Positions 26,960 through 57,640 of a stretch of DNA of 64,000 nucleotides are shown here, piece after piece; within the stretch, counting starts at the first letter, position 1; every line of letters begins with the position of its first letter. Source of the DNA: Macrostomum lignano (lineage: Eukaryota). The notes beneath the pieces were generated by a model. The model was not told the origin of the DNA. It was given only the letters and a program-made list of their open reading frames with translations, and ran no database searches. The stretch is from assembly GCA_002269645.1 (NCBI GenBank), contig NIVC01001431.1, positions 44,335 to 108,334 on the forward strand, written 5' to 3'. The position numbers and the translations under genes are program-made.

Positions 26960-27051
26960 GCAAGTTTAAATTTTTTAGTTAGCTGAACACTTCAATTACA
27001 CAGTGATTTATTGTGTCGGCTGTTTCCAAAGCACTTGCAATAAAATTATTC

Positions 27052-30429: not shown

Positions 30430-30552
30430 CGCAAAAATGAGTGGCTGCGGAGCTAAAAATGAGTGGCTGCGGAGCTAAAAATGAGTACCTGTGGCGCTAA
30501 AATGAGTGCCTGCGGCGCTAAAATGAGTACCTGCGGCGCTGAAATGAGTGCT
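30430..30552. repeat. 21-22-bp short tandem repeat with GCGCTAAAAT motif (mirror 40552-40674, third copy ~36143-36262)
   Basis: About 6 copies read directly. Confidence 0.9.
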
Positions 30553-30814
30553 GACAACACGGATTCTGATAGTAATGTACGTGTAGGAATTTCGTCGTGT
30601 ACATTTACATGTAGTAGAAATCTTGGCTTTGTCACCCACCATAAAATCCATGGCGACGAGCCTGAGTGCATAACTACAACACCGAGTTGCTTTAAATATG
30701 CATTTACGCGGCTATCATGTGCCAGCAGGGGCGCATCCAGAGGCTACAGGATGTTGCATGGGGCTCAGTAAAAATCGAGTTTCTTTTCTTAATTGTTGTA
30801 AAAGCAGAGAGCAG

Positions 30815-33800: not shown

Positions 33801-34642
33801 ATATCAGATACATCAAGTACATATTGAAAGATGAGAGAGAGATCGAGAGAAGATGACACGAGAGAAGAGTGCGTGCTATATAGTAAAGGAGAAATGAGAA
33901 TTGAGAGCAGAGAAGTAGAAAGATCAAGAGATCTTTGAGTTATGGGGTAAGTTTTGGAGATATATGGCACATGGCACCTTTTTCGAGATGCAAGATAGAC
34001 TGCATGGTCTGGTCAGCTATCAATTTATAAGGCATGAGAGTGGAACTGATGTGCAGGTATACCCAGCTTTTGCTAATGTTTTGCCAATTTCTTAATCTCA
34101 AGCTCAAATTCTTATTCCTGATTCCTCACGTTGGGGTAAATATGAGATCAGAGTGCAGGCGAGGGGATAGAAAAGAATACATATAACATATCAGATACAT
34201 CAAGTACATATTGAAAGATGAGAGAGAGATCGAGAGAAGATGACACGAGAGAAGAGTGCGTGCTATATAGTAAAGGAGAAATGAGAATTGAGAGCAGAGA
34301 AGTAGAAAGATCAAGAGATCTTTGAGTTATGGGGTAAGTTTTGGAGATATATGGCACATGGCACCTTTTTCGAGATGCAAGATAGACTGCATGGTCTGGT
34401 CAGCTATCAATTTATAAGGCATGAGAGTGGAACTGATGTGCAGGTATACCCAGCTTTTGCTAATGTTTTGCCAATTTCTTAATCTCAAGCTCAAATTCTT
34501 ATTCCTGATTCCTCACGTTGGGGTAAATATGAGATCAGAGTGCAGGCGAGGGGATAGAAAAGAATACATATAACATATCAGATACATCAAGTACATATTG
34601 AAAGATGAGAGAGAGATCGAGAGAAGATGACACGAGAGAAGA
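30815..34642 (+). repeat. 387-bp tandem array, about 10 near-identical units, left arm
   Basis: ORFs recur at exact 387-nt offsets (31030, 31417 ... 34513). Purine-rich + strand. Confidence 0.97.
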
Positions 34643-34785
34643 GAGAATGAAATGAAAATGAGAACAGAGAAGTAAAACGAAGAGAAGAAGAACGCAAAAG
34701 GTGCCATGTGCCATATATCCCTAAAACTTGGAGAGGAGAGGAAAGGAGAGCTGCCATTTGCCCTACACTTCTTCGAGTAGCTTTC

Positions 34786-34853: not shown

Positions 34854-34895
34854 ATTCCTGAAATAAGAATTTGAGAATTTAAGAATTTTTTTATT

Positions 34896-36924
34896 CAGGA
34901 ATAAGAATTTGAGCTTGAGATTAAGAAATTGGCAAAACATTAGCAAAAGCTGGGTATACCTGCACATCAGTTCCACTCTCATGCCTTATAAATTGATAGC
35001 TGACCAGACCATGCAGTCTATCTTGCATCTCGAAAAAGGTGCCATGTGCCATATATCTCCAAAACTTACCCCATAACTCAAAGATCTCTTGATCTTTCTA
35101 CTTCTCTGCTCTCAATTCTCATTTCTCCTTTACTATATAGCACGCACTCTTCTCTCGTGTCATCTTCTCTCGATCTCTCTCTCATCTTTCAATATGTACT
35201 TGATGTATCTGATATGTTATATGTATTCTTTTCTATCCCCTCGCCTGCACTCTGATCTCATATTTACCCCAACGTGAGGAATCAGGAATAAGAATTTGAG
35301 CTTGAGATTAAGAAATTGGCAAAACATTAGCAAAAGCTGGGTATACCTGCACATCAGTTCCACTCTCATGCCTTATAAATTGATAGCTGACCAGACCATG
35401 CAGTCTATCTTGCATCTCGAAAAAGGTGCCATGTGCCATATATCTCCAAAACTTACCCCATAACTCAAAGATCTCTTGATCTTTCTACTTCTCTGCTCTC
35501 AATTCTCATTTCTCCTTTACTATATAGCACGCACTCTTCTCTCGTGTCATCTTCTCTCGATCTCTCTCTCATCTTTCAATATGTACTTGATGTATCTGAT
35601 ATGTTATATGTATTCTTTTCTATCCCCTCGCCTGCACTCTGATCTCATATTTACCCCAACGTGAGGAATCAGGAATAAGAATTTGAGCTTGAGATTAAGA
35701 AATTGGCAAAACATTAGCAAAAGCTGGGTATACCTGCACATCAGTTCCACTCTCATGCCTTATAAATTGATAGCTGACCAGACCATGCAGTCTATCTTGC
35801 ATCTCGAAAAAGGTGCCATGTGCCATATATCTCCAAAACTTACCCCATAACTCAAAGATCTCTTGATCTTTCTACTTCTCTGCTCTCTGCTTTTACAACA
35901 ATTAAGAAAAGAAACTCGATTTTTACTGAGCCCCATGCAACATCCTGTAGCCTCTGGATGCGCCCCTGCTGGCACATGATAGCCGCGTAAATGCATATTT
36001 AAAGCAACTCGGTGTTGTAGTTATGCACTCAGGCTCGTCGCCATGGATTTTATGGTGGGTGACAAGCCAAGATTTCTACTACATGTAAATGTACACGACG
36101 AAATTCCTACACGTACATTACTATCAGAATCCGTGTTGTCAGCACTCATTTCAGCGCCGCAGGTACTCATTTTAGCGCCGCAGGCACTCATTTTAGCGCC
36201 ACAGGTACTCATTTTTAGCTCCGCAGCCCTCATTTTTAGCTCCGCAGCCACTCATTTTTTGCGCACAGGCCTCATTGTATATAGACAAATTTCCACTTAC
36301 AAGCTTTAATTTAAACTGAAGAAAATGGTAACAAAAACTGGTATAAAATAGTCTATTTTTATAATGACTGAATGGCCCTTAGCAGCTAATAACATTTTGC
36401 TTTTAGAGCGTAGTATATCTTTATTAATTCATCATTTTTTGTACAACTCGTATATCCGGAAAGTAGTTAGTAGTTAGTAGTAGTTAGATAGTAGATAGTA
36501 GGATCTCTAGTAGGATACTAAAAGTAGTATGAGCGAAACATGTGCACTATAGTTTAGGGACATACACTAGCATAATGTTGTAAGGTCGCAATTCATCATT
36601 ATATTTTAAAGATGGCCCGAAGAAATGGTCCTTTTCCACTCACACGTCCGATTTCTTTTCCAGATGGAAATTGCTTTCCTGCAAGGAGGGCGGCATCCGC
36701 CCCAAAAATAGAAAATAGAATGTCTTAGAATAGAATAGAATGAGAAAAAGAAAATTTCCAGATACAAAATATTGGAAGACGTTTAAGAACCCATTTTACA
36801 GATACTAAAAAACAGTGTTGCGTTGAATGCAAAACGGTTTATCAGGATCAAGTATGCTACAGCTTACATATCGGCATTGTCATATTGGCATTGTTAACCA
36901 AATTCAAGATGGCGCGAAATCTTG
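34896..36924 (-). repeat. Inverted partial copy: about 2.5 units of the 387-bp array plus a diverged or error-rich copy of 29735-30830
   Basis: Reverse-complement match with many small indels. Homology ends after AAATCTTG at about 36924. Confidence 0.85.
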
Positions 36925-37250: not shown

Positions 37251-40200
37251 TGTCATCTTCTCTCGATCTCTCTCTCATCTTTCAATATGTACTTGATGTA
37301 TCTGATATGTTATATGTATTCTTTTCTATCCCCTCGCCTGCACTCTGATTCTCATATTTACCCAACGTGAGGAATCAGGAATAAGAATTTGAGCTTGAGA
37401 TTAAGAAATTGGCAAAACATTAGCAAAAGCTGGGTATACCTGCATCACTCCACTCTCATGCCTTATAAATTGATAGCTGACCAGACCATGCAGTCTATCT
37501 TGCATCTCGAAAAAGGGCATGTGCCATATATCTCCAAAACTTACCCCATAACTCAAAGATCTCTTGATCTTTCTACTTCTCTGCTCTCAATTCTCATTTC
37601 TCCTTTACTATATAGCACGCACTCTTCTCTCGTGTCATCTTCTCTCGATCTCTCTCTCATCTTTCAATATGTACTTGATGTATCTGATATGTTATATGTA
37701 TTCTTTTCTATCCCCTCGCCTGCACTCTGATCTCATATTTACCCCAACGTGAGGAATCAGGAATAAGAATTTGAGCTTGAGATTAAGAAATTGGCAAAAC
37801 ATTAGCAAAAGCTGGGTATACCTGCACATCAGTTCCACTCTCATGCCTTATAAATTGATAGCTGACCAGACCATGCAGTCTATCTTGCATCTCGAAAAAG
37901 GTGCCATGTGCCATATATCTCCAAAACTTACCCCATAACTCAAAGATCTCTTGATCTTTCTACTTCTCTGCTCTCAATTCTCATTTCTCCTTTACTATAT
38001 AGCACGCACTCTTCTCTCGTGTCATCTTCTCTCGATCTCTCTCTCATCTTTCAATATGTACTTGATGTATCTGATATGTTATATGTATTCTTTTCTATCC
38101 CCTCGCCTGCACTCTGATCTCATATTTACCCCAACGTGAGGAATCAGGAATAAGAATTTGAGCTTGAGATTAAGAAATTGGCAAAACATTAGCAAAAGCT
38201 GGGTATACCTGCACATCAGTTCCACTCTCATGCCTTATAAATTGATAGCTGACCAGACCATGCAGTCTATCTTGCATCTCGAAAAAGGTGCCATGTGCCA
38301 TATATCTCCAAAACTTACCCCACAACTCAAAGATCTCTTGATCTTTCTACTTCTCTGCTCTCAATTCTCATTTCTCCTTTACTATATAGCACGCACTCTT
38401 CTCTCGTGTCATCTTCTCTCGATCTCTCTCTCATCTTTCAATATGTACTTGATGTATCTGATATGTTATATGTATTCTTTTCTATCCCCTCGCCTGCACT
38501 CTGATCTCATATTTACCCCAACGTGAGGAATCAGGAATAAGAATTTGAGCTTGAGATTAAGAAATTGGCAAAACATTAGCAAAAGCTGGGTATACCTGCA
38601 CATCAGTTCCACTCTCATGCCTTATAAATTGATAGCTGACCAGACCATGCAGTCTATCTTGCATCTCGAAAAAGGTGCCATGTGCCATATATCTCCAAAA
38701 CTTACCCCATAACTCAAAGATCTCTTGATCTTTCTACTTCTCTGCTCTCAATTCTCATTTCTCCTTTACTATATAGCACGCACTCTTCTCTCGTGTCATC
38801 TTCTCTCGATCTCTCTCTCATCTTTCAATATGTACTTGATGTATCTGATATGTTATATGTATTCTTTTCTATCCCCTCGCCTGCACTCTGATCTCATATT
38901 TACCCCAACGTGAGGAATCAGGAATAAGAATTTGAGCTTGAGATTAAGAAATTGGCAAAACATTAGCAAAAGCTGGGTATACCTGCACATCAGTTCCACT
39001 CTCATGCCTTATAAATTGATAGCTGACCAGACCATGCAGTCTATCTTGCATCTCGAAAAAGGTGCCATGTGCCACATATCTCCAAAACTTACCCCATAAC
39101 TCAAAGATCTCTTGATCTTTCTACTTCTCTGCTCTCAATTCTCATTTCTCCTTTACTATATAGCACGCACTCTTCTCTCGTGTCATCTTCTCTCGATCTC
39201 TCTCTCATCTTTCAATATGTACTTGATGTATCTGATATGTTATATGTATTCTTTTCTATCCCCTCGCCTGCACTCTGATCTCATATTTACCCCAACGTGA
39301 GGAATCAGGAATAAGAATTTGAGCTTGAGATTAAGAAATTGGCAAAACATTAGCAAAAGCTGGGTATACCTGCACATCAGTTCCACTCTCATGCCTTATA
39401 AATTGATAGCTGACCAGACCATGCAGTCTATCTTGCATCTCGAAAAAGGTGCCATGTGCCATATATCTCCAAAACTTACCCCATAACTCAAAGATCTCTT
39501 GATCTTTCTACTTCTCTGCTCTCAATTCTCATTTCTCCTTTACTATATAGCACGCACTCTTCTCTCGTGTCATCTTCTCTCGATCTCTCTCTCATCTTTC
39601 AATATGTACTTGATGTATCTGATATGTTATATGTATTCTTTTCTATCCCCTCGCCTGCACTCTGATCTCATATTTACCCCAACGTGAGGAATCAGGAATA
39701 AGAATTTGAGCTTGAGATTAAGAAATTGGCAAAACATTAGCAAAAGCTGGGTATACCTGCACATCAGTTCCACTCTCATGCCTTATAAATTGATAGCTGA
39801 CCAGACCATGCAGTCTATCTTGCATCTCGAAAAAGGTGCCATGTGCCACATATCTCCAAAACTTACCCCATAACTCAAAGATCTCTTGATCTTTCTACTT
39901 CTCTGCTCTCAATTCTCATTTCTCCTTTACTATATAGCACGCACTCTTCTCTCGTGTCATCTTCTCTCGATCTCTCTCTCATCTTTCAATATGTACTTGA
40001 TGTATCTGATATGTTATATGTATTCTTTTCTATCCCCTCGCCTGCACTCTGATCTCATATTTACCCCAACGTGAGGAATCAGGAATAAGAATTTGAGCTT
40101 GAGATTAAGAAATTGGCAAAACATTAGCAAAAGCTGGGTATACCTGCACATCAGTTCCACTCTCATGCCTTATAAATTGATAGCTGACCAGACCATGCAG

Positions 40201-40290
40201 TCTATCTTGCATCTCGAAAAAGGTGCCATGTGCCATATATCTCCAAAACTTACCCCACAACTCAAAGATCCCTTGATCTTTCTACTTCTC
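37251..40290 (-). repeat. 387-bp tandem array, about 8 units, right arm (inverted)
   Basis: Reverse complement of the left array, including the same unit-specific SNPs. Confidence 0.97.
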
Positions 40291-41513
40291 TGCTCTCTGC
40301 TTTTACAACAATTAAGAAAAGAAACTCGATTTTTACTGAGCCCCATGCAACATCCTGTAGCCTCTGGATGCGCCCCTGCTGGCACATGATAGCCGCGTAA
40401 ATGCATATTTAAAGCAACTCGGTGTTGTAGTTATGCACTCAGGCTCGTCGCCATGGATTTTATGGTGGGTGACAAAGCCAAGATTTCTACTACATGTAAA
40501 TGTACACGACGAAATTCCTACACGTACATTACTATCAGAATCCGTGTTGTCAGCACTCATTTCAGCGCCGCAGGTACTCATTTTAGCGCCGCAGGCACTC
40601 ATTTTAGCGCCACAGGTACTCATTTTTAGCTCCGCAGCCACTCATTTTTAGCTCCGCAGCCACTCATTTTTGCGCCACAGGCCTCATTGTATATAGACAA
40701 ATTTCCACTTACAAGCTTTAATTTAAACTGAAGAAAATGGTAACAAAACTGGTATAAAATAGTCTATTTTTATAAATGACTGAATGGCCCTTAGCAGCTA
40801 ATAACATTTTGCTTTTAGAGCGTAGTATATCTTTATTAATTCATCATTTTTTGTACAACTCGTATATCCGGAAAGTAGTTAGTTAGTAGTTAGTAGTAGT
40901 TAGATAGTAGATAGTAGGATCTCTAGTAGGATACTAAAAGTAGTATGAGCGAAACATGTGCACTATAGTTTAGGGACATACACTAGCATAATGTTGTAAG
41001 GTCGCAATTCATCATTATATTTTAAAGATGGCCCGAAGAAATGGTCCTTTTCCACTCACACGTCCGATTTCTTTTCCAGATGGAACCTGCTAACTTTAGT
41101 GCTGCAGCTGCCGCCCCTGCCGCAAAAATAGAAAATAGAATGTCTTAGAATACAATGGAATAGAACGTAATAGAATAGAATGAGAAATAGAAAATTTCCA
41201 GATACAAAATATTGGAAGAAGTTTAAGAACCGATTTTACAGATACTAAAAATCAGTGTTGCGTTGAATGCAAAACGGTTTATCAGGGATCAAGTATGCTA
41301 CAGTTTACATATCGACATTGTCATATTGGCATTGTTAAACACTAAATGTCAAGATGGCGCGAAATCTTGGCGACTAATGACTGACAACAACAACAAGTTA
41401 CGCCCCAGGGTCGAGGTTGGGCATCACAGGTCGCGCCCCAGAGCACGGGAGCGGAGAAAGGCCGGTCCACCGGCCTGGTCGGGGGCGCCAGCATCGGCCA
41501 GCAGGCAGTCCGG

Positions 41514-41681: not shown

Positions 41682-42432
41682 TACTAATGATTGAGTCATA
41701 CAACAAAGAAGAGTAGATAGGACATAAAATAGAGATACACAGTGAAAGTAGCATGACTGAATGACCTGGAGGAGGGTGTGATAAAAAGGGTGATTCTGGA
41801 TGGGCAATTGTAAAAGAGCAAATCTAGACGGGCGAATCTAAGTAAAATCATAAGTCATTGTCAAATGTTAACATTGCAATAAGTGTGTAAAAGAAGAAAA
41901 CAAATGCAATACACAATGAAGTCGTTAAAGTAAACTATAACTTAATTATAACAACGTGTATTTAGTAGAAAATGGAACGATAAACTGTCAACAAACAGTG
42001 ATCTAAATGGAAGTACACCTGATTGAAAAATAATCAATAACAAAAGTATAAAAGGTAACGAAATAAGTGCTCTTTGGCTCCATTAATCAAAACAGTTTAG
42101 CGCCAGTTTATAAACTGAGTGACAGTTCATCACTGCATTAAACTGAATTAATTAACGTTAACAGGTCCGCTACGTGTAAGCAGAGCACATGGACCCAGGA
42201 ATGATACAGCTGAGCAGCGAATTCACAGCACACTTGAGCTATTGTGTGCAAGTGAGGTTAAAAATGACATCTATTGGCACAGCAATTTTTAATTACCACT
42301 TTATACGATAATTTTAATGATTGCAAGTGCTTGAGAATAAACTGTTAAATTAATTTTGTATTTCTGCTCGCTCAGAGATTGCCATTACAGTGAGTAGGAG
42401 AAGGGGTCGGGGTTCAAGGACTATTAAAAGGT

Positions 42433-43251
42433 CTAATCAGCAAATCGATTGCTTTTTGGGGAAGAGGACACCAGGTTTGGATCAAATTTAGTTACTTTAA
42501 CTTCATGTGACGATTTCCGTCTGCGAATAACGGGTTGTGGAACTATTGTGAGAGGAACAATTGCTTTAGGCTTGAGAGGAATAGGAACTGGGCCGATTGC
42601 AGCGGGGAATTTTTTTCCTGGAGATTTTTTTAAATTTCCTAGTGAGCATCTAGGAATACAATTGGCAATTTCTTTTGTTGATGTAGCACAAGGCAGTCTT
42701 GGTGCACCACAGTTGCACCCAGAAAATGTGCAATGCCGATCAGATTGCTTAGGACTAGATGCCGCAGTAGAAGTTGAGGCTGCAACAGGTTGTGAAGCTG
42801 CACGGAGTGGAGCAACGTTGTCTGTCTCGCTTATTTCGTAATTATAAACCAGATGTTGAATGTCCAGGACTACTTGATCGAATGGAGCATAGTGGATGGG
42901 CACTTCTTTTACAACTGCCAAGTCGCGAAGCTCTGCCAGACGTACGGAAGCTTGTTTTCTCATTCGCTTAGTAGCAGCCCGACCTGCCAGGTCTTTTCTA
43001 CGACTTGGAGTTTGAAATTCGGAAGCATGGTTGTTTCGAAAGTGCATTCTAGGGCAAGAAATCATATCCTGGCAGAGAGGGCAGAGAGCCACAGACTTGG
43101 CCTTCGAATTGGCTTTAGACAGATCAATCATGGCCTGAATCTGCTCATCAGTTGTGGTAGGGTGAAACTTTTCCCGATGTCGCCACAATTGGTACGTTCT
43201 ACCAGTCCATGAGCACAAAAAGCAACAGATTTTTGCGTGTTTATTAGGCAT
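42433..43251 (-). CDS. Double C2H2-type zinc-finger protein, right copy
   Basis: Same translation as 27853-28671. Confidence 0.8.
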   Translation of the reverse strand: MPNKHAKICCFLCSWTGRTYQLWRHREKFHPTTTDEQIQAMIDLSKANSKAKSVALCPLCQDMISCPRMHFRNNHASEFQTPSRRKDLAGRAATKRMRKQASVRLAELRDLAVVKEVPIHYAPFDQVVLDIQHLVYNYEISETDNVAPLRAASQPVAASTSTAASSPKQSDRHCTFSGCNCGAPRLPCATSTKEIANCIPRCSLGNLKKSPGKKFPAAIGPVPIPLKPKAIVPLTIVPQPVIRRRKSSHEVKVTKFDPNLVSSSPKSNRFAD

Positions 43252-44256
43252 GGCTAAAACAGTTGTTGAATAATTGGATTGGTGTTTTAGAAGACTTAAT
43301 TTCAATGCGTCGAGTGGCTAGCTGAAATAAGTATAGCATTGTTTTTTTAGTAACTGAAGAAAGTCAGTAGCAAAAGTTACATCTAGTTAAAGCTGATTGA
43401 ATTATGGGGACAGGGTTGCACTGTATAATATTAGTAAGTATAACTAAATAACCATAGGGTACCATTATACAAAAAGAGATTAGTATGACTGAATGGCCTG
43501 GAGAAAAGATAACAGCACTCCTGGCTGAGGGGTCCGTATCAAGTATGACATCAAGACTGATCAAGTATTCGATGCTGACTTCTTATAGATAGCGCAAAGT
43601 TTAGGCCTACAGCTAGGGTCTTAAGTCGATTCTAAGGTGTCGATTCTATGGATTTGAGAATGGCAATCGGGATCGAAAACTGAGTCCTAACTAATATTGA
43701 CGACTTAAAAATGAGAAAAAGCAACCAACATATCGTTTAATAACACCATAACGGGCGAAAATGTCAACTTAACGGCAGTTTAATTTTCATGCAATGAAGT
43801 GTAGTATAAAAGGTAACGAAATAAATAAGTGCTCTTTGGCTCCGTTAATCAAAACAATTTAGCGCCAGTTTATAAACTGAGTGACAGTTCATCACTGCAT
43901 TAAACTGAATTAATTAACGTTAACAGGTCCGCTACGTGTAAGCAGAGCACATGGACCCAGGAATGATACAGCTGAGCAGCGAATTCACAGCACACTTGAG
44001 CTATTGTGTGCAAGTGAGGTTAAAAATGACATCTATTGGCACAGCAATTTTTGAATAATTTTATTGCAAGTGCTTTGGAAACAGCCGACACAATAAATCA
44101 CTGTGTAATTGAAGTGTTCAGCTAACTAAAAAATTTAAACTTGCTCAAAAAGTATCTTCTGAATCATCCGATTCAGACGCTGAAGACTCAGGTAAAGCAG
44201 ATGTGCGAAGGACAGTAACCTAGGAATGTAGACAGTGCGAACGACATGCGAAAAAA

Positions 44257-45255
44257 TTAAGAGTTTAGCCACGGAAACTTTTGCAAACACTCTTCATCTC
44301 GTTCACCATAATCATAAAGCAACTCAATTCCCTTGGGAATATTATGTAATGCAAAAAATCCTATTCGGCTTGTGTGGCGTCCAATGTCTTTGCAAGGTGA
44401 TATGACACTAGGAACCAAGTTTGGGTTCAGTCGACTATGATTAATATAGCGACCTACAGAATCAGTGAGGGTAGCGTCTTCGCATAATGATTTTGAACCA
44501 TAAAAATAGAAAAAGGCGAATGCGGGCGAATCTCCTTCGCGAGATCGCTTTTCTTCCCTAGCCGCCCCTTCTTTTTTGGATAAAACTGCTCCACCATAGA
44601 AACAGACGAATGACTTCGCCTTGATATTCTCATCAGAAAACAGTCCATAACCCTTCTCACCCGCTAACTGAACTGTAACTTTTGCCGGAAGAAGTTTTGA
44701 GGCTTTTGTATAGATTCGGAGACAAGACTGTTTACCAGCCCGCGACTCTTGTTCTCTGTGGGAGGATATACAAAGATATTTTTAGGTTTATACAACCGTT
44801 TACATGTCTGATCAAATCTTGAAAAGCAGGATAGGCAATAACATTACTCACCTCTCGTGCAATCCCTGTTTTTCGTTCTCGTAACTTGAATCCGGATACC
44901 GTGGCAAAGGCTGGTCGGCAATAAAACACCAGTACAGTTCTCCGAATCGCCGCAGAGCACGTTTTCTCGCCAACCTGATAGCTGGTTGTCCAGTTAATAA
45001 GGAGTTAAGACGCCTGTAATCGCCCGCATGACATTTAGCGTAGTGATCTCGCAAATTTACAGCAAACTGATCACATAGCGCGCATAATTTTACATCTGAC
45101 TTTCTGGACCAACGAAGATATTGAATTATGCAACTTGCTCTTTTAGCGTCTAAAGCATGCTTTTTAGTTGCATGCAAAAGAAGTCGATCAGCTCGAGCAC
45201 TATAGGTACTTAAACCAGGAAGACACAGAGGGCACTCGTACTTTTCAGTCGTCAT
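44257..45255 (-). CDS. Zinc-finger + PR-Set7/SETD8(KMT5A)-like SET-domain protein, complement(join(44257..44755,44852..45255)), 300 aa
   Basis: The track ORF (135 aa) ends at donor AG|GTGAGT (44851). A 96-bp intron ends at CCCACAG (44756). Exon 2 reads in frame: ...GEKGYGLFSDENIKAKSFVCFYGGAVL...AFFYFYGSKSLCEDATLTDSVGRYINHSRLNPNL...RIGFFALHNIPKGIELLYDYGERDEECLQKFPWLNS*. This matches the SET8 signatures KGRG, EYHG, CVDAT, GRLINHS and ELLYDYGDR...HPWL. Confidence 0.9.
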
Positions 45256-45977
45256 GGTAGATTTGTGATCGTAGCCAAAGATTGATAGATTATTACCACA
45301 AAAAAGAGTAAATTAATTGATTTTTGCCGACTCGTTTCAGATAACACAATCACTTTCGGATTTCAATAAGAAATCTGTAAAAAGGTGGACACATGTCGAC
45401 ATGAAAGACAGATTGATTGAGTACTAAATCTTTGTGATACTAAAAACTTAGGACTACAGCTAGGGTCTTGAGTCGATTCTATGGATTTGAGAATGGCAAT
45501 CGGGATCGAAAACTGAGTCCTAACTAATATTGACGACTTAAAAATGAGAAAAAGCAACCAACATATCGTTTAATAACACCATAACGGGCGAAAATGTCAA
45601 CTTAACGGCAGTTTAATTTTCATGCAATGAAGTGTAGTATAAAAGGTAACGAAATAAATAAGTGCTCTTTGGCTCCGTTAATCAAAACAATTTAGCGCCA
45701 GTTTATAAACTGAGTGACAGTTCATCACTGCATTAAACTGAATTAATTAACGTTAACAGGTCCGCTACGTGTAAGCAGAGCACATGGACCCAGGAATGAT
45801 ACAGCTGAGCAGCGAATTCACAGCACACTTGAGCTATTGTGTGCAAGTGAGGTTAAAAATGACATCTATTGGCACAGCAATTTTTGAATAATTTTATTGC
45901 AAGTGCTTTGGAAACAGCCGACACAATAAATCACTGTGTAATTGAAGTGTTCAGCTAACTAAAAAATTTAAACTTGC

Positions 45978-48489
45978 TCAAAAAGTATCTTCTGAATCAT
46001 CCGATTCAGACGCTGAAGACTCAGTCGCCGACTCAGTTGGCGAGTCGTTGCTAATAGGAGGAACATTTTCAATGCTTTGTTCTGCGCCGCCCAAAATGAG
46101 TCGAAAATATTCTGCCCTTGCTGGAACGTCAAGATTTACAACTCTTTCTAAAATTGATCGAAATAGTTTTCGAAACTGAGCCGCCAAACCAGCCTGATTA
46201 TCTAGACTCTTGCAAACCATGTCCATTTTTACAATAAAGTCATACCATTCCTCAGATACGATATGCAGTTCCTCATTCACTCTGTCGTACTTATGATAGA
46301 GATCGATTGCACGCCGACGGAAACGGACAGAAGTAGCTGATTCAGATAAACCATCGTACTTTGAACTATTTGGCTTCCGATACTGATCAAAAGAACCCCG
46401 GGTCTCTTCCGGCAGACGATTAATATCAGCTTTCATTTCTGAAGTCAAACCTTGTACACGGCGCAAGCAAGCTCTGTTATGACCTTGGCCCATATTTAGT
46501 CCAGACTGTCGCAGCCAATGTTCTCTGAGAACTGCAAGCGAACGAATATTAGATAGAAGGTCGTTTTCAGAGTTTTCTACTGCGCCTATAAGAGAGTTCT
46601 GATGCCACTGACGGCCGAGATTCCGAATTTGAACCTCCGAAAGTACTAAGCTTCCGTCTAAAATTCCGGAAGCTTGCTGTATTCGTGCATCATCAAGAAG
46701 TGAGTTCATTTCCGAAGACATGTTTTTTATCGTACTGTCCAAAAGTCTGAGACGTTGCTGGAACCACTGGGGTGTGTTAAACAATTGATTCGCATTGAAA
46801 TGAAACAGAATTTGAGACATACAGGTGCTCCTACGATCAGGTCGCATGTACTTTAGTGAATGCCCATATGGGCGAAGTTGTGCCCAAGCTCTCTCTGTGT
46901 TCTCGCCATCACACAAGCCCGCTCCAGGAGTGACACGCACAGAGAACCTTCTTTGGCAGCTTGGTTTGTGGCCAAGTGCGTGGAATGCATTGATGGCACA
47001 TGAAGAGGCCTGTACGTTAGCACCAGATTTAGTAACTGCGGATTGTACGCGAGCTGAAACGCGGCAGCCTGCAGTGAGATGTGAGAAAAATGTATGTACT
47101 TTATTTTGATCCCGCTAAATTATACGGACATAGTATGCAAAAGATGCACTTACCAACGTCATAGATAAGAAGCAATTTCTTCGATACAGACGTGTCTCTT
47201 AGAAAATGCTCAAGGCACTGTTCTATGTAGCAGAACCGCTCTCCTGTCGTAGTAATGTTACAACCATTCAATAGACGATTGTGCCGGCAAAAAAGTCCAA
47301 AAAAGCCATACACATCATGTCTACCAGCACCTCGGGATGGTGGCTCGAGCGCCCCAGCTTTCCAACTTGGACAGTTTTGTTCTTCTAAGCGATTTTTTGG
47401 CGCGTCTGCTTTGACATCTACATTCACTAATGGAACAGGAAGCGGACGACCATCTGACGGAGTTAGAGCTTGCCTGAATCCCATTGAAGAAAATCTTTGC
47501 CAGCCGAAAAGCGCATCAGCACAAACAACAGTCTGGCGATCATTATGCTGATCGGGACACAAGAGACACGACTTGGGCCATTTTGCTGAGCGGATCTGTA
47601 ATTGTCTAAATTTTAGCAGAACACAGTGGCGTTGCAGACGTTGATACAAACTTGATGCTAATTTATCTCTGCAGATTCCTTGGCCAACAGTAGCACCTAA
47701 AAACAGGGCTTTGATTGCCCTGTGAGCCGGTAGTCGACCTACAGTAGTCAAATTGTCGAGAAGTGTTAATAAACTTATGGCGAAATAGGCTGTGCAGTCT
47801 GTGGCGGTTGCGGTTGCATCATAAGACGGGAAGTAACCCATTGAGAGAAGCGCATCCACTTTGTCACATGAACTACACGTAAACATCTGAGCTTGAACGA
47901 TTCCCGACAAATCGATTAGCTCAACAGTTGATGCAGCCGACAATTCGCGAGCCTCTCTGCTTGCCACACAACAGAAAAGTGCAGCAACCATGGGCACGTG
48001 CACTGGATCTGCAAACATAAGCGTCTCAGAATTCCACTGTTCAAATTTGTGTGGTGCAAAATCACCATGTGTGATTTCTTTACAGTCTTCACAGAAATCC
48101 AGCCTACAAGTGACACACCGATAAATTCCAGGCGCATCACTGCAACGAATGCATGAACCCAAGTTGAAATAATTTTCATACGCATTGCTGTGAAGATCCG
48201 AAAACATGGAATGATCCTCCCACTCAGTTTCTTCAGGCGGATTTGAAGGTTCAGTAGAATTTTCAGGCGGCATTTCGGCTGCATTATCAGGCATTTCAGG
48301 AAAAAAATAATTCCCTACCGACTGATCCTGATGAGAACCATAAGCAGAGCTTGAGCTAGGACGACGGGTGGCACCAAAACCAGAAGATTTCTGGAGCTTT
48401 CTTGGACGTCCTCGACGGCTTGTCCGCAATACAGCTTCGACATCACTATCAGAATCTGTATTAGAAAACAATGTTCTGCGGCGAGACAT
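45978..48489 (-). CDS. KDZ transposase, right copy, complement(join(45978..47068,47154..48489))
   Basis: Same translation as the left copy, same intron. Confidence 0.92.
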
Positions 48490-51171
48490 GACCTGAAATG
48501 TTTTAATGCAAATTGTAATTCAAGAGTATGTATGTATGTATGTATGACTTCAATATTATACTATTAGACGTATTTATTCATACAGATTCATACATATCTG
48601 AACACACATTTGTCCAAAAATGACACTTTGGATTTGTATGATATAATGAATAAACACTGATGTAAATCATTGTTATAAATTACTTTTGTACCTACCAAAA
48701 CCAATACGTAGTAACTTTAAGCTTATTATGTATGCATTACTATTCTGATATATTTGTCTACTTTATAGCATATAAAAATGTGTGAGTGCAATGTATGTGA
48801 AAAAAGATTCAGTATTAATTATTATATTTTTATATATTTATATTTTATCTATTCTTTAATCCTTTCTCTTACCTTTCCTTTCTCTTATTGCCTATTCATT
48901 CTTCTTTCTACTCTTATCTGCCCCTCAGCCTTTATCTGGCTCTCTCTCATATACTCTCCCAGTTGTGCTCTTAAGGGACATAGTACTCTCATAGTTGTTT
49001 CATTCTATGGCCTACTTGTTGACTGCTTTGATTGCATCATCTTTCTAGCCAATTTTTCAGTCTTGAGAAAAACTACATGTATACATTTTTAGCTCCACAG
49101 TGCCACATATCTGATATTGTGGCTAACCTAGGGCTGATGCTTTAAAGTTTGTTTAATTAGTAACTAATCATATATATAAACCTTTGCCTAAGAAAATAAT
49201 ACAAGTCAATGAAATAGTCTTTTTAAAAATGAATGATTATTTAAAAGGACCCTAAACTAACAAGAATACAATCCACTTTGGTAACAGCCACTTCGGTAAA
49301 GCAGATTTATGACTTTTAGCACTTTTTCTTTATGTTAATTTTTTAGTAACTATTAATTAAATTAATCATTAACTTGTTTAGTACTTTATTGCTGATTACC
49401 ATTCAATTTTTTCTGATTAGGATATATTATACATGTAATTTGTTTCAACTTGAACAGATAGAATATATAACAGCGGAGACTTAGAGAGATCAATGAAAGT
49501 AATTAATGACAAATAAATTAAAGTAAATACTGAAATTTCACATTTCTAACTCAAAGTAATTCTAATTACACAATACTTTGGTAATTACAAGTTTTATAGG
49601 TTGTATCATAACATATCTTGAGTATCAAGCGCACCTGGAAATTTAAATAGATTGATCAAAACACATTAAAACAATTTTATCATTGTTGGCTAAATCATTG
49701 TCTAGGCCTAAAACATTATTTTTTGTCTCAAAAACTATTTGAAATTATTTTTTAGAGCACATTAAGATACATATTGTTATATCTCCTCCCTTGTTACCAA
49801 AATGGACTGTTACCACTAACAATACATTAAATACAAGTGCTAAAAATCCTAGGAGCTAAAGTGGCTAAAATAAAGGAGAAAGTCTCAAAAATCTTCCAAA
49901 TAAAGCCAGGAGATAAAGGAGATAAAGGAAGGTGTAGGCACCCTGCATTTATCCACTTATTCTATTGAATCAAATATACTAAATATCTATACTAGGCCTA
50001 TACTATTTTTGTATAGCATGTTCTCTAAGGGCTGCAGGGCAAAGCATTCAAAAAGGACAAAAAAGTGAAAAAAATTAATCATGAATATCATGGAAGAATA
50101 TAGATATAGCCTATAGACTATAGTGTATAGCCTTGCAAGGCTTGCAATTGCAATTTAGCCTTGCAATTTTAACCATAAGCTTATAGTTAAAATTGCCTTG
50201 GTTGACTTGCAATAGTTTTGGGCCACTTATTCATCTTGTTAATATTAGTGATAAGTCTTGGCCAGGGGGTGCATGACCAAGATGGCCACACACCAAGATG
50301 GCCACAGTTTATTAAAATGTCTAAATAGATAATATGATGCTCATTTCCTTATTATAATTGGTCACAATTGGTCTTAAGGTATGTCTGTGAGAGCTGTGTC
50401 TTATTTGCCCTATAACTATAAGCCAAGTTTTAACATGAAGATTAAATAAAGATCAAGATCCACTATTTGCAAACTCAATATTTTAAGTTAAAAAGGCAAT
50501 AAATATATGCTCGAACAATTTAAACCCACCTGCAACTTGGCTAGATACTAAATTTTCCAAAAGGGCTTTCCAGACATGAGTCCAAAAATTGAAGTAAGCA
50601 GAAGCAAGTAACTGTATAATTATCCACGAAACTAAAAATGAAGTGTCTGTATGTATGCAAGTATATCTAATAGTAAGTAAGTAAGCTTGGCTCAGGCAAG
50701 AAGCCTGTTTGGCCAGTATATGTCAGTGTATTTATTATTAATAATAATTCAATAGATAAACTAGATATGAGCGGCTAATTCGGCAATAATATAGTATTTG
50801 AAAGAGTGTTAATATTTTTTTCTACGAAACTTCAAACGATCTTTAACGATAAACCCGCCGCGGAAGCCATGCAAATTTCGCGACAGAATCCCCAAATCAG
50901 CATTTGAAGTTGCTTACTATCATTTTAAAGCTATCGCTGCTGTAGTAAGTACTTTAGTCACTTTTTGATGTATTAATTTCCATTGCCAATGAATGGGGCT
51001 CAAGAGTATACTAATAGTAGACTTGTTTTATAAACGATTAGAACATTTGTCCAAAAACGACACTTTTGATATTTTAATCCCAAATGGATAAAAATGAAAA
51101 TCATTGCTACGAAAACTATGATTAATGTGCATGAAAATACAAAATAGAATAAAAAAATACTATGAGATATC

Positions 51172-54100
51172 TCAAATCGGCGCTGGAAAGCTCAAATTGG
51201 CGCGGAAAGCTCAAATTGGCGCCGAAAGTCAAATTTGGCGCCAGGATCACCAAATCGGCGCCAGTATCGCCAAATCAGCGCCGGAATGCTGAAATCAGCG
51301 CTAAAAAGCCCGGACCAGCGATGGAAAGCTCAAATCGGCGCTGGAAAGCTCAAATTGGCGCGGAAAGCTCAAATTGGCGCCAAAAGTCAAATTTGGCGCC
51401 AGGATCACCAAATCGGCGCCAGTATCGCCAAATCAGCGCTGGAATGCTGAAATCAGCGCTAAAAAGCCCGGACCAGCGCTGGAAAGCTCAAATCGGCGCT
51501 GGAAAGCTCAAATTGGCGCGGGAAAGCTCAAATTGGCGCCGAAAGTCAAATTTGGCGCCAGGATCACCAAATTTGGCGCCAGTATCGCCAAATCAGCGCC
51601 GGAATGCTGAAAACAGCGCTAAAAAGCCCGGACCAGCGCTGGAAAGCTCAAATTGGCGCGGAAAGCTTAAATTGGCGCCGAAAGCCAAATTTGGCGCCAG
51701 GATCACCAAATCGGCGCCAGTATCGCCAAATCAGCGCCGGAATGCTGAAAACAGCGCTAAAAAGCCCGGACCAGCGCTGGAAAGCTCAAATTGGCGCGGA
51801 AAGCTTAAATTGGCGCCGAAAGCCAAATTTGGCGCCAGGATCACCAAATCGGCGCCAGTATCGCCAAATCAGCGCCGGAATGCTGAAAACAGCGCTAAAA
51901 AGCCCGGACCAGCGCTGGAAAGCTCAAATCGGCGCTGGAAAGCTCAAATTGGCGCGGAAAGCTCAAATTGGCGCCGAAAGTCAAATTTGGCGCCAGGATC
52001 ACCAAATCGGCGCCAGGATCCCAATCAGCGCTGGAATGCTGAAATCAGCGCTAAAAAGCCCGGACCAGCGCTGGAAAGCTCAAATCGGCGCTGGAAAGCT
52101 CAAATTGGCGCGAAAGCTCAAATTGGCGCTGAAAGTCAAATTTGGCGCCAGGATCACCAAATCGGCGCCAGTATCGCCAAATCAGCGCCGGAATGCTGAA
52201 AACAGCGCTAAAAAGCCCGGACCAGCGCTGGAAAGCTCAAATTGGCGCGGAAAGCTCAAATTGGCGCCGAAAGCCAAATTTGGCGCCAGGATCACCAAAT
52301 CGGCGCCAGTATCGCCAAATCAGCGCCGGAATGCTGAAAACAGCGCTAAAAAGCCCGGACCAGCGCTGGAAAGCTCAAATTGGCGCGGAAAGCTTAAATT
52401 GGCGCCGAAAGCCAAATTTGGCGCCAGGATCACCAAATCGGCGCCAGTATCGCCAAATCAGCGCCGGAATGCTGAAAACAGCGCTAAAAAGCCCGGACCA
52501 GCGCTGGAAAGCTCAAATCGGCGCTGGAAAGCTCAAATTGGCGCGGAAAGCTCAAATTGGCGCCGAAAGTCAAATTTGGCGCCAGGATCACCAAATCGGC
52601 GCCAGTATCGCCAAATCAGCGCCGGAATGCTGAAAACAGCGCTAAAAAGCCCGGACCAGCGCTGGAAAGCTCAAATCGGCGCTGGAAAGCTCAAATTGGC
52701 GCGGAAAGCTCAAATTGGCGCCGAAAGCAAATTTGGCGCCAGGATCACCAAATCGGCGCCAGTATCGCCAAATCAGCGCCGGAATGCTGAAAACAGCGCT
52801 AAAAAGCCCGGACCAGCGCTGGAAAGCTCAAATTGGCGCGGAAAGCTTAAATTGGCGCCGAAAGCCAAATTTGGCGCCAGGATCACCAAATCGGCGCCAG
52901 TATCGCCAAATCAGCGCCGGAATGCTGAAAACAGCGCTAAAAAGCCCGGACCAGCGCTGGAAAGCTCAAATTGGCGCGGAAAGCTTAAATTGGCGCCGAA
53001 AGCCAAATTTGGCGCCAGGATCACCAAATCGGCGCCAGTATCGCCAAATCAGCGCCGGAATGCTGAAAACAGCGCTAAAAAGCCCGGACCAGCGCTGGAA
53101 AGCTCAAATCGGCGCTGGAAAGCTCAAATTGGCGCGGAAAGCTTAAATTGGCGCCGAAAGCCAAATTTGGCGCCAGGATCACCAAATCGGCGCCAGTATC
53201 GCCAAATCAGCGCCGGAATGCTGAAAACAGCGCTAAAAAGCCCGGACCAGCGCTGGAAAGCTCAAATCGGCGCTGGAAAGCTCAAATTGGCGCGGAAAGC
53301 TCAAATTGGCGCCGAAAGTCAAATTTGGCGCCAGGATCACCAAATCGGCGCCAGTATCGCCAAATCAGCGCCGGAATGCTGAAATCAGCGCTAAAAAGCC
53401 CGGACCAGCGCTGGAAAGCTCAAATCGGCGCTGGAAAGCTCAAATTGGCGCGGAAAGCTCAAATTGGCGCCGAAAGTCAAATTTGGCGCCAGGATCACCA
53501 AATCGGCGCCAGTATCGCCAAATCAGCGCCGGAATGCTGAAAACAGCGCTAAAAAGCCCGGACCAGCGCTGGAAAGCTCAAATTGGCGCGGAAAGCTTAA
53601 ATTGGCGCCGAAAGCCAAATTTGGCGCCAGGATCACCAAATCGGCGCCAGTATCGCCAAATCAGCGCCGGAATGCTGAAAACAGCGCTAAAAAGCCCGGA
53701 CCAGCGCTGGAAAGCTCAAATTGGCGCGGAAAGCTTAAATTGGCGCCGAAAGCCAAATTTGGCGCCAGGATCACCAAATCGGCGCCAGTATCGCCAAATC
53801 AGCGCCGGAATGCTGAAAACAGCGCTAAAAAGCCCGGACCAGCGCTGGAAAGCTCAAATCGGCGCTGGAAAGCTCAAATTGGCGCGGAAAGCTCAAATTG
53901 GCGCCGAAAGTCAAATTTGGCGCCAGGATCACCAAATCGGCGCCAGTATCGCCAAATCAGCGCCGGAATGCTGAAAACAGCGCTAAAAAGCCCGGACCAG
54001 CGCTGGAAAGCTCAAATCGGCGCGGAAAGCTCAAATTGGCGCCGAAAGTCAAATTTGGCGCCAGGATCACCAAATCGGCGCCAGTATCGCCAAATCAGCG

Positions 54101-57100: not shown

Positions 57101-57640
57101 GGAAAGCTCAAATTGGCGCCGAAAGTCAAATTTGGCGCCAGTATCGCCAAATCAGCGCCGGAATGCTGAAAACAGCGCTAAAAAGCCCGGACCAGCGCTG
57201 GAAAGCTCAAATCGGCGCTGGAAAGCTCAAATTGGCGCGGAAAGCTCAAATTGGCGCCGAAAGTCAAATTTGGCGCCAGGATCACCAAATCGGCGCCAGG
57301 ATCCCTTAATCAGCGCTGGAATGCTGAAATCAGCGCTAAAAAGCCCGGACCAGCGCTGGAAAGCTCAAATCGGCGCTGGAAAGCTCAAATTGGCGCGGAA
57401 AGCTCAAATTGGCGCCGAAAGTCAAATTTGGCGCTAGGATCACCAAATCGGCGCCAGTATCGCAAAATCAGCGCCGGAATGCTGAAAACAGCGCTAAAAA
57501 GCCCGGACCAGCGCTGGAAAGCTCAAATCGGCGCTGGAAAGCTCAAATTGGCGCGGAAAGCTCAAATTGGCGCCGAAAGTCAAATTTGGCGCCAGGATCA
57601 CCAAATCGGCGCCAGGATCCCTTAATCAGCGCTGGAATGT
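51172..57640. repeat. GCGC-rich 158/138-bp higher-order satellite, right arm (inverted, about 1.3 kb longer than left)
   Basis: Reverse-complement unit. Array ends mirror the left array, the interior order differs. Confidence 0.97.

What the first reader, a model, noticed from the sequence alone, without database searches (positions are those of the whole stretch)
44257..45255. KDZ transposon carries its own spliced zinc-finger + PR-Set7/SETD8-like histone methyltransferase gene (SET exon missing from the ORF track)
Seen: the 135-aa track ORF stops at a GTGAGT donor. Splicing a 96-bp GT-AG intron gives a 300-aa protein with two CxxC..HxxxxH fingers fused to a complete SET domain. Established: GRxINHS, ELLYDYG-x-R and a C-terminal PWL are SET8/PR-Set7 hallmarks. 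The two tyrosines that make SET8 a mono-methyltransferase (human Y245 in EYHG, Y334 in LLYDY) have counterparts here (FYGG, LLYDY). Inference: the element sits one spacer downstream of an intact KDZ transposase and could write H4K20me1 on its own chromatin, guided by the fingers, to evade silencing or time its replication. Fungal KDZ elements are known to associate with TET/JBP DNA modifiers. I do not know of a described animal KDZ element with a ZnF-SET8 cargo, but could not search the literature.
Basis: partly seen in the sequence, partly recalled or inferred. Interest (0 to 1): 0.92.

Follow-up and report, generated by a model that had tools for sequence, protein, structure and literature searches.

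The report
Flatworm KDZ transposon carrying a SET8-like methyltransferase
In the flatworm Macrostomum lignano, two anciently diverged families of a KDZ-type jumping gene each carry, next to their transposase, a gene for a zinc-finger protein fused to a histone-methyltransferase-like enzyme, so the element probably brings its own chromatin-modifying enzyme, which is rare for animal transposons.

Summary
On the minus strand, exon 1 (45255..44852), a 96-bp GT-AG intron and exon 2 (44755..44257) give a 300-aa protein. It has two C2H2-like fingers and a complete SET domain (Pfam E=7.6e-16). Solved SET8/KMT5A structures are its best sequence and fold matches, and the catalytic tyrosines and NHS motif are kept.

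The same protein is already in GenBank as an RNA-seq-derived hypothetical protein of Macrostomum lignano. It lies about 720 bp downstream of an intact, spliced 808-aa KDZ transposase.

The key new result is a second M. lignano KDZ family whose transposase is only 47% identical. It is multi-copy and carries a ZnF-SET gene downstream of the transposase at all six loci read, with a ZnF-only ORF seen where ORFs were listed. The linkage is therefore old and maintained, not chance.

The SET domain is not the canonical host KMT5A. It is 29% identical to human, against 55-59% for flatworm orthologues.

Transposon-borne SET genes are known in HarbingerS, MuDR, Helentron and Plavaka elements. I found no report of a KDZ element, or an animal element, with a SET8-like gene, so this is a new variant of a known kind.

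Activity, substrate (H4K20me1?), self-targeting, the 3' ends of the element and target-site duplications remain untested. One copy in the window lacks the SET unit.

The parts
44852..45255 (-). ZnF-SET gene, exon 1: start codon and two C2H2-like fingers (aa 1-135)
   Evidence: The fingers are invariant in three homologues.
44756..44851 (-). 96-bp GT-AG intron (GTGAGT...CCCACAG)
   Evidence: The product is identical to GenBank BOX15_Mlig001681g4.
44257..44755 (-). ZnF-SET gene, exon 2: N-flank helix, SET domain, C-terminal FPWLNS and stop codon
   Evidence: Pfam SET E=7.6e-16. SETD8 is the best PDB match by sequence and by fold, TM 0.85-0.88.
45978..48489 (-). KDZ transposase gene (exon 48489..47154, 85-bp intron 47153..47069, exon 47068..45978), 808 aa, with a B-box-like finger and a weak CxC1 match
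   Evidence: Identical to GenBank BOX15_Mlig001681g7.
45472..46024 (-). Repeat R, copy 1 (553 bp). It starts inside the last 47 bp of the KDZ coding sequence and forms the spacer upstream of the SET gene.
43639..44191 (-). Repeat R, copy 2, 100% identical to copy 1. It starts 66 bp after the SET stop codon and carries a remnant of the KDZ C-terminal codons.
42433..43305 (-). ZnF-only accessory gene (ORF; ATG at 43251). Its two fingers are arranged like those of ZnF-SET.
   Evidence: It is 36% identical (E=2e-11) to the ZnF-only ORF of family 2 and shows weak similarity to the ZnF-SET N-terminus. It is not in the GenBank annotation.
42061..42295 (-). Repeat R, partial third copy (97-98%), downstream of the ZnF-only gene
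57980..58003 (-). Sharp outer (5') end of the copy that holds the SET gene. On the element side it reads CAGTTTATGGCCGCCCGTTAGCGG.
51171..57639 (-). 5' subterminal tandem array (period about 138-158 bp, built from 20-bp GCGCC-containing subrepeats). It is shared at about 80-91% with family 2.
37251..40297 (-). 387-bp tandem array downstream of the genes, on the 3' side. The end of the element was not found.
16211..34643 (+). Second, inverted copy of the whole unit: KDZ 24448..26959, R 26913..27465, ZnF-only 27799..28671. It is identical in its core but lacks exactly one R + SET unit (1833 bp).

Best explanation
The ZnF-SET gene is a conserved accessory gene of a Macrostomum lineage of KDZ DNA transposons. 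It is not the host's KMT5A and not a chance neighbour.

The element encodes three proteins on one strand: a KDZ transposase, a small two-finger protein, and a protein with the same kind of two-finger module fused to a SET8-like catalytic domain. The genes are probably made from one transcription unit. Each is followed by the same repeated spacer (R).

The enzyme most likely is an active S-adenosylmethionine-dependent lysine mono-methyltransferase. I infer that its fingers bring it to DNA of the element, with the 20-bp subterminal repeats as candidate sites, or to the transposition complex. There it would methylate a nearby lysine, with H4K20 as the first candidate. The benefit to the element could be either of two things:
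- keeping its chromatin in a state that allows expression, or
- steering double-strand-break repair at excision and integration sites. H4K20 methylation recruits 53BP1; this is my own background knowledge, not tested here.

Shown: the gene structure, domain identity, intact catalytic motifs, linkage in two deeply diverged families, multi-copy status and the sharp 5' ends.

Inferred: co-transcription, catalytic activity, substrate, targeting and benefit.

The confidence of 0.7 applies to the core claim (a conserved, element-linked, probably active SET8-like accessory gene). The specific H4K20me1-on-own-chromatin mechanism is much less certain (about 0.2).
For: Gene and domain:
- The spliced 300-aa product equals an RNA-seq-derived GenBank model.
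- SET domain at E=7.6e-16.
- The top PDB sequence hits and the top 17 fold hits are all SET8. The SET part of the model has pLDDT above 90.
- Y188, N240-H241, Y282 and Y284 are conserved.

Linkage:
- In the window and in L002, the KDZ gene is followed about 720 bp later by the SET gene on the same strand.
- Family 2 has a transposase 47% identical. Its ZnF-SET protein is 38% identical overall with invariant finger ligands.
- Family 2 shows KDZ followed by ZnF-SET at L004, L008, L009/L013, L010, L011 and L012.
- A homologous ZnF-only ORF was read at L004 only.
- UniProt even fuses KDZ and SET into one model, P0006.
- GenBank accession numbers of KDZ and SET proteins are consecutive at 9 or more gene copies.

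Transcription:
- KDZ and SET genes share a transcription-unit prefix in both families: Mlig001681, and Mlig004599/Mlig022522.
- By the authors' naming rule this prefix marks one cluster of transcription units.

Mobility:
- Sharp 5' ends beginning CAG, with unrelated flanks, in both arms of the window and in L004 versus L008.
- Copies are almost identical: 6 substitutions in 8.4 kb.

Not the host orthologue:
- 29% identity to human KMT5A and 35-36% to flatworm KMT5A proteins, which are themselves 55-59% identical to human.
- No PIP-box-like motif.
Against: - No 3' terminus, terminal inverted repeat or target-site duplication was found for either family. Mobility therefore rests on 5' junctions and copy number.
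- M. lignano DV1 is partly polyploid and its assembly is redundant.
- The family 1 copies are 100% identical and share a palindromic context. They may be one locus seen several times.
- Because copies are identical, no dN/dS test was possible.
- The SET-domain tree does not recover the ZnF-SET proteins as a clade (2 of 200 bootstraps). Their common origin rests on the shared finger module.
- One copy in the window lacks the SET unit, so the gene is not needed for a copy to persist.
- The N-terminal fingers fold with low confidence (pLDDT 50-65).
- No enzymatic or chromatin data exist.
Confidence: 0.7

Rival explanations
1. Domesticated cluster. The KDZ-derived gene and its ZnF and ZnF-SET partners are host genes that no longer move. 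The copies seen are products of polyploidy, segmental duplication and assembly redundancy, and the trio serves a host function.
For: - Family 1 appears as essentially one palindromic locus assembled on four contigs with a 100% identical core.
- The GenBank annotation pipeline dropped transcripts that overlap repeat annotations. These genes survived, so they were not flagged as repeats.
- No 3' end or target-site duplication was found.
- The assembly has 180-312 Mb of duplicated blocks.
Against: - Family 2 has 9 or more KDZ gene copies on at least 7 contigs.
- It has at least three different upstream contexts and a nucleotide-sharp common 5' end.
- Two families with the same layout and 5' subterminal repeat arrays look like transposon families.
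- Near-identity of copies fits recent amplification.
Confidence: 0.15
2. The gene is an element-borne SET8-like enzyme, but its substrate is not histone H4K20. It may methylate a non-histone protein such as the transposase, the ZnF partner or a host repair or replication factor. Alternatively it may be a catalytically weak binding module.
For: - The SET domain is very diverged from canonical KMT5A, at 29-36% identity.
- The C-flank has FPW instead of HPW.
- Human SET8 has known non-histone substrates such as PCNA and p53. This is my own background knowledge, not tested here.
Against: - The whole SET8 catalytic construct, including the N-flank helix and C-flank, superimposes at TM 0.85-0.88.
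- The two tyrosines that hold the lysine amine, the NHS motif and the PWL end are kept in all three ZnF-SET proteins.
Confidence: 0.3
3. Chance or recent gene capture. A host SET8 paralogue was picked up, or simply lies beside a KDZ copy, with no function for the element.
For: - The SET unit is bracketed by two 100% identical 553-bp repeats.
- It is absent from the other copy in the same window. That is what a recent insertion or duplication could look like.
Against: - A homologous ZnF-SET gene with the same finger module is linked to a KDZ transposase that is only 47% identical. The association therefore predates the split of the families.
- The open frame and catalytic motifs are kept in both.
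- The SET-less copy is most simply a deletion by recombination between the two R copies.
Confidence: 0.05

Closest known systems
SET8 / PR-Set7 / KMT5A (H4K20 mono-methyltransferase)
   Same: - Best sequence and fold match.
- A minimal SET domain with an N-flank helix and a short C-flank ending in PWL.
- No cysteine-rich pre-SET or post-SET regions.
- Y245, Y334, Y336 and N298-H299 equivalents are conserved.
   Different: - Only 29% identical to human KMT5A and 35-36% to flatworm KMT5A in the SET domain. True flatworm orthologues are 55-59% identical to human.
- The N-terminus is two C2H2-like fingers instead of the disordered, PIP-box-bearing regulatory region.
- The gene is linked to a transposase and is multi-copy.
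KDZ (Kyakuja-Dileera-Zisupton) DNA transposons, including the fungal ones that carry TET/JBP dioxygenase genes (PMC12730594)
   Same: - Transposase with a full PF18758 domain.
- The element carries a gene for an epigenetic enzyme next to the transposase.
- The 5' end starts with CA, as reported for Kyakuja (PMC12730594).
   Different: - The host is an animal (a flatworm).
- The cargo is a histone/lysine methyltransferase plus zinc-finger proteins, not a DNA-base dioxygenase.
- The 3' end and target-site duplication are unknown.
- There are large subterminal tandem arrays.
DNA transposons with SET-domain accessory genes: HarbingerS and MuDR of Phytophthora (Kojima & Jurka 2014, cited in PMC12730594), proto-Helentron of Phytophthora (PMC4067079), Plavaka of the red alga Bostrychia (bioRxiv 10.1101/2025.02.11.637652)
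   Same: A cut-and-paste or rolling-circle element that carries its own SET methyltransferase gene as an accessory gene.
   Different: - A different transposase superfamily (KDZ).
- A different SET subtype. This one is SET8-like, whereas the Helentron one is Clr4-like (PMC4067079).
- The zinc-finger fusion and the second ZnF-only gene.
- An animal host.
PRDM proteins and SETMAR
   Same: - PRDM proteins combine a SET-type domain with C2H2 fingers that target it to DNA.
- SETMAR combines SET and a transposase in one locus (PMC2847698).
   Different: - PRDM proteins have an N-terminal PR/SET domain and C-terminal finger arrays, and they are host genes.
- SETMAR is a host SET gene that captured a mariner transposase. 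That is the opposite direction from this case.

Membership tests
SET-domain lysine methyltransferases (Pfam PF00856) | Full SET domain above the curated threshold | tested here: met
   58.9 bits against a cut-off of 22.4, covering profile positions 1-105 of 105.
SET-domain lysine methyltransferases (Pfam PF00856) | Cofactor and catalytic motifs (GxG, NHS, ELxYDY tyrosine) | tested here: met
   G170-Y-G172, N240-H241-S242 and E279-L-L-Y282-D-Y284 are present. They are invariant or nearly invariant in 68 relatives.
SET8/PR-Set7/KMT5A | SET8-type fold: N-flank helix, SET domain and short C-flank, with no pre-SET or post-SET zinc clusters | tested here: met
   AlphaFold2 SET part has pLDDT above 90. 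The top 17 Foldseek PDB hits are all SET8, with target TM 0.85-0.88 and rmsd about 2 Å over 161 columns.
SET8/PR-Set7/KMT5A | Mono-methylase tyrosines (human Y245 and Y334) present | tested here: met
   Y188 and Y282 align with them.
SET8/PR-Set7/KMT5A | Orthology to animal KMT5A (groups with flatworm KMT5A at similar divergence) | tested here: not met
   29% identity to human and 35-36% to Calicophoron, Hymenolepis and Schistosoma KMT5A. Those proteins are 55-59% identical to human and cluster together. The NJ tree is otherwise unresolved. The M. lignano host orthologue itself could not be retrieved.
SET8/PR-Set7/KMT5A | N-terminal regulatory region with a PCNA-binding PIP degron | tested here: not met
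   No PIP-like motif. The N-terminus is two zinc fingers.
SET8/PR-Set7/KMT5A | H4K20 mono-methylation activity | not testable with these tools
   Needs an enzyme assay.
KDZ transposons | KDZ transposase catalytic domain (PF18758) | tested here: met
   E=1.6e-31 over positions 3-216 of 217 for the window protein. E=4e-34 for family 2.
KDZ transposons | Associated CxC cysteine cluster | tested here: inconclusive
   CxC1 match at E=0.005, 17 bits, below the cut-off of 26.9. A B-box-like finger is also below its cut-off.
KDZ transposons | Defined termini with 7-8 bp target-site duplications | tested here: inconclusive
   Sharp 5' ends starting CAG were found in both families. No 3' end, terminal inverted repeat or duplication was found.
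KDZ transposons | Several copies in different genomic contexts | tested here: met
   Family 2 has 9 or more gene copies and three upstream contexts. Family 1 has two arms with unrelated outer flanks. Polyploidy inflates these counts.
Transposons with SET accessory genes | SET gene inside the element and conserved across related families | tested here: met
   Same strand, 0.7-2 kb downstream of the transposase, in two families with 47% identical transposases. 'Inside the element' is inferred, because the 3' end is unknown.

The most novel reading that the evidence does not exclude
An active animal DNA transposon lineage has kept, since before its two families split, a small operon-like unit of transposase, ZnF protein and ZnF-targeted SET8-like enzyme. 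The enzyme writes H4K20me1 (or a related mark) on the element's own chromatin or at its break sites. That would make it the first transposon-encoded histone writer shown to act for the element in an animal. A naturally SET-less copy in the same genome would serve as a control.
Probability: 0.2. Interest if true: 0.85.

Novelty: new variant of a known kind. Interest (0 to 1): 0.6.

Why it matters
Accessory genes in eukaryotic DNA transposons are rare. The best-understood cases are plant VANDAL anti-silencing factors and fungal TET/JBP genes, which show that elements can manipulate host epigenetic control.

A transposon-borne, finger-targeted SET8-like enzyme in an animal would extend this idea from DNA modification to histone or protein methylation. 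The host species also has working transgenesis and genomic resources (PMC5730564), so the idea can be tested directly.

It also warns annotators that 'KMT5A-like' genes in invertebrate genomes may be transposon cargo rather than host paralogues.

Tried and rejected
- **Word-index homologue searches.** Searches with the SET protein, the KDZ protein and a three-sequence profile each returned only three proteins. They were useful but shallow. The profile search added nothing.
- **Exhaustive HMMER search.** It gave 1906 SET relatives, but only two others with the same finger module: P0008, and P0009 from an unidentified sequencing run on a 1.7-kb contig with no context.
- **NJ tree of 70 SET domains.** It is star-like and gives no support for a ZnF-SET clade. 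A first attempt timed out.
- **dN/dS.** It was not possible because copies are identical or differ at 6 sites in 8.4 kb.
- **Search for a terminal inverted repeat partner of the 5' end.** None was found in the window or in L004.
- **Search for the 3' end.** Family 1 ends in head-to-head 387-bp arrays with a 251-bp junction and an assembly gap. Family 2 copies stay similar to the end of the fetched DNA.
- **Other SET8-like proteins fused or linked to transposases.** Seven long representatives have no transposon domain. P0003 lies among housekeeping genes of a compact eukaryote.
- **Literature.** No paper joining KDZ and SET in one element was found. The accession SRR19430222 is not mentioned in the library.
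- **Flanking ORFs of the window.** They gave nothing relevant.

Full report
**1. What is in the sequence**

Reading the minus strand of 44100-45400 and the ORF list confirms the 135-aa ORF 45255..44848. It runs into GTGAGT.

Removing 44851..44756 (96 bp, GT...CAG) joins 404 nt to 499 nt. The result is a 903-nt frame encoding 300 aa.

The downstream exon has no ATG, GTG or TTG codon in frame until 44418. This explains why it is invisible in an ORF list.

The N-terminal 80 residues hold two fingers: C8-x2-C11-x16-H28-x4-H33 and C58-x2-C61-x9-H71-x3-C75-H76.

**2. Domain identity**

Residues 170-285 match Pfam SET over the complete profile (E=7.6e-16).

Against all solved structures, the twelve best sequence matches are human SET8/SETD8/KMT5A constructs (E about 4e-13 to 1.5e-11). 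EZH2 follows at about 4e-11. The alignment runs from the N-flank to the last residues, FPWLNS against HPWLKH.

Counting back from the human C-terminus in that alignment gives these equivalences:

| Window protein | Human KMT5A |
|---|---|
| Y188 | Y245 |
| N240-H241 | N298-H299 |
| Y282 | Y334 |
| Y284 | Y336 |

An AlphaFold2 model built on 68 relatives is confident for the SET half (pLDDT above 90). It is weak for the fingers (pLDDT 50-65). Its 17 best PDB fold matches are all SET8, with target TM 0.85-0.88.

The observation and the 'SET8-like' reading are therefore correct.

**3. Organism and independent support**

The identical 300-aa protein exists in GenBank as hypothetical protein BOX15_Mlig001681g4 of the flatworm Macrostomum lignano. 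It is found on four contigs of assembly GCA_002269645.1, one of which is the window.

That annotation was produced from genome-guided RNA-seq transcript assemblies, which were cut into genes using trans-splicing and poly(A) evidence (PMC5730564). The intron therefore has indirect transcript support.

**4. The neighbouring genes**

Upstream on the same strand lies a KDZ transposase gene, 48489..45978. It has an 85-bp GTAAGT...CAG intron and encodes 808 aa. The product is identical to BOX15_Mlig001681g7 and has a full PF18758 domain (E=1.6e-31).

Downstream lies a third ORF (43305..42433) whose N-terminus has the same two-finger layout.

Each of the three genes is followed by a copy of a spacer repeat R:
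- R1 is at 46024..45472.
- R2 is at 44191..43639 and is 100% identical to R1.
- R3 is a partial third copy at 42295..42061.

R1 begins inside the last 47 bp of the KDZ coding sequence. R2 therefore carries a remnant of those codons just after the SET stop codon.

**5. Is the linkage meaningful?**

This was the decisive question.

A search with the transposase found a second M. lignano KDZ family that is only 47% identical (P0005). It also found a UniProt gene model (P0006) that fuses a KDZ domain and a SET domain.

Six loci of this family were read: L004, L008, L009/L013, L010, L011 and L012. At each one the transposase is followed about 2 kb downstream, on the same strand, by a ZnF-SET gene of 409-497 aa. 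At five of the six a gene for a small (84- or 98-aa) protein follows it.

At L004, where I listed ORFs, a ZnF-only ORF lies between the transposase and the ZnF-SET gene.

Sequence relationships between the two families:
- The ZnF-SET proteins are 38% identical, and every finger ligand and every catalytic motif is invariant.
- The ZnF-only ORFs are 36% identical (E=2e-11).

GenBank lists at least nine KDZ gene copies of family 2. Their accession numbers are consecutive with those of their SET neighbours.

The trio of transposase, ZnF protein and ZnF-SET therefore predates the split of the two families and has been kept intact. That is what is expected of genes belonging to the element. Gene order differs: KDZ-SET-ZnF in the window and KDZ-ZnF-SET in family 2.

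In both families the KDZ and SET genes carry the same transcription-unit prefix. By the authors' naming rule this marks one cluster of transcription units. I take this as evidence for co-transcription, but it is an inference.

**6. Is it a transposon?**

Partly shown.

The window is a large inverted duplication:
- One arm (minus strand, 58003 down to 37251) holds KDZ-R-SET-R-ZnF.
- The other arm (plus strand, 16211 to about 34643) has a 100% identical core. It lacks exactly one R + SET unit of 1833 bp.

Both arms end outward at the same nucleotide, reading CAGTTTATGGCC on the element side, with unrelated flanks.

Family 2 likewise has a nucleotide-sharp 5' end, CAGAGCATATTCC, with unrelated flanks in L004 and L008. 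L012 shows a third upstream context.

Both families have a 5' subterminal tandem array of 20-bp GCGCC-containing subrepeats. It is alignable at 80-91% between families, although the rest of the DNA is not. Both also have a different tandem array on the 3' side.

Family 2 copies differ at only 6 positions in 8.4 kb.

Against this:
- I found no 3' end, no inverted-repeat partner and no target-site duplication.
- The DV1 genome is partly polyploid and redundantly assembled.
- The four family 1 contigs look like one palindromic locus.

A start with CA and the absence of terminal inverted repeats agree with what is reported for Kyakuja elements (PMC12730594).

**7. Is it the host's KMT5A?**

No, as far as could be tested.

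In the SET domain the window protein is 29% identical to human KMT5A. It is 35-36% identical to the KMT5A proteins of Calicophoron, Hymenolepis and Schistosoma. Those proteins are 55-59% identical to human and cluster together.

It also lacks a PIP-like motif.

The neighbour-joining tree is otherwise unresolved and does not unite the ZnF-SET proteins. Their common origin rests on the shared finger module.

The M. lignano host orthologue itself could not be retrieved.

**8. Mechanism**

Best-supported reading: an element-encoded, catalytically competent SET8-like mono-methyltransferase that is targeted by C2H2-like fingers.

What it methylates and where is not known. H4K20 on nucleosomes of the element or at its break sites is the leading candidate because of the fold and the tyrosine pattern. 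A non-histone substrate is a serious alternative given the divergence.

The SET-less copy is most simply a deletion by recombination between the identical R copies, or a collapse in assembly. It offers a natural comparison.

**9. What is known**

SET genes carried by DNA transposons are documented in:
- HarbingerS and MuDR of Phytophthora (cited in PMC12730594);
- a Phytophthora proto-Helentron with a Clr4-like SET (PMC4067079);
- Plavaka elements of a red alga (bioRxiv 10.1101/2025.02.11.637652).

Fungal KDZ elements carry TET/JBP genes (PMC12730594).

Five literature searches found no KDZ element with a SET gene and no animal transposon with a SET8-like gene. The library is incomplete, and Repbase Reports are not in it.

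**10. Verdict**

It is speculative about function.

It is a new variant of a known kind. Interest is about 0.6. The finding is not unprecedented in principle, but it is a clean, conserved and experimentally accessible case in an animal.

Noticed in passing
window 16211-34643 (+) versus 58003-37251 (-); N gap at 36955-37250: The window is a roughly 20-kb inverted duplication of the whole KDZ unit. The 387-bp tandem arrays meet head to head, and there is a partial third copy (36924..34895) next to an assembly gap. L002 shows the same palindromic junction, so it is either a real structure or a recurrent assembly artefact.
   Followed up: partly
window 26913-27465 (arm A) versus 46024-43639 (arm B): The plus-strand copy lacks exactly one R + ZnF-SET unit (1833 bp) but is otherwise 100% identical over about 9 kb. 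This looks like recombination between the two identical 553-bp R copies, or an assembly collapse.
   Followed up: partly
window 16575-21766 and 51171-57639; L004 5216-7156: Tandem arrays built from 20-bp units such as TTTCC(A)GCGCCAATTTGAGC lie just inside the 5' end of both KDZ families. They are 80-91% alike between families, although the transposases are only 47% identical. They are candidate transposase or zinc-finger binding sites.
   Followed up: partly
window 15601-15864; L004 4736-5036: An unrelated repeat (96.6% identical) lies just outside the 5' end of a family 1 copy and of a family 2 copy, but not outside L008 or arm B. This could reflect a target preference or simply an abundant repeat.
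   Followed up: no
window 34644-34894: The 251-bp junction between the two inverted 387-bp arrays contains a perfect 20-bp inverted repeat, GTAGCTGCGTTCTCATTGGA ... TCCAATGAGAACGCAGCTAC.
   Followed up: no
L008 5330-8659: There is a 3.3-kb insertion relative to L004, inside the family 2 element upstream of the KDZ gene, with ACTAGT on both sides. It is probably a nested transposon with a target-site duplication.
   Followed up: no
L004 15265-16274; proteins P0008, P0185, P0186: The linker of the family 2 ZnF-SET gene contains a duplicated 77-aa exon-like unit (99% identical copies 403 bp apart). Gene models include it once or twice (409 versus 486/497 aa). This is either alternative splicing or copy variation.
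   Followed up: no
L008 18496-19072; L009 10001-10577 (P0184): A 98-aa protein with a very acidic C-terminus is encoded downstream of the SET gene at L008, L009/L013, L010 and L011, and an 84-aa product is called at the same position in L012; the same ORF, with one residue changed, is present but uncalled at L004. It shares the same transcription-unit prefix. No counterpart was recognised in the window.
   Followed up: no
window 41263-41851: Overlapping short ORFs on the minus strand include a reverse-transcriptase-like motif (NGFRPRRGTVTQI). This may be a retroelement fragment between the ZnF-only gene and the 387-bp array. Pfam gave no hit.
   Followed up: partly
L006 (Logan SRR19430222, 1683 bp): This locus holds a third ZnF-SET homologue (P0009, 349 aa, uninterrupted ORF) from an unidentified sequencing run. 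It has the same finger ligands and the same FPWL end. The organism and genomic context are unknown.
   Followed up: partly
window 11279-11962: ORFs on both strands lie in a tandemly repetitive stretch. One translates to a coiled-coil-like repeat with many weak Pfam coiled-coil hits. It is probably a repeat artefact.
   Followed up: no
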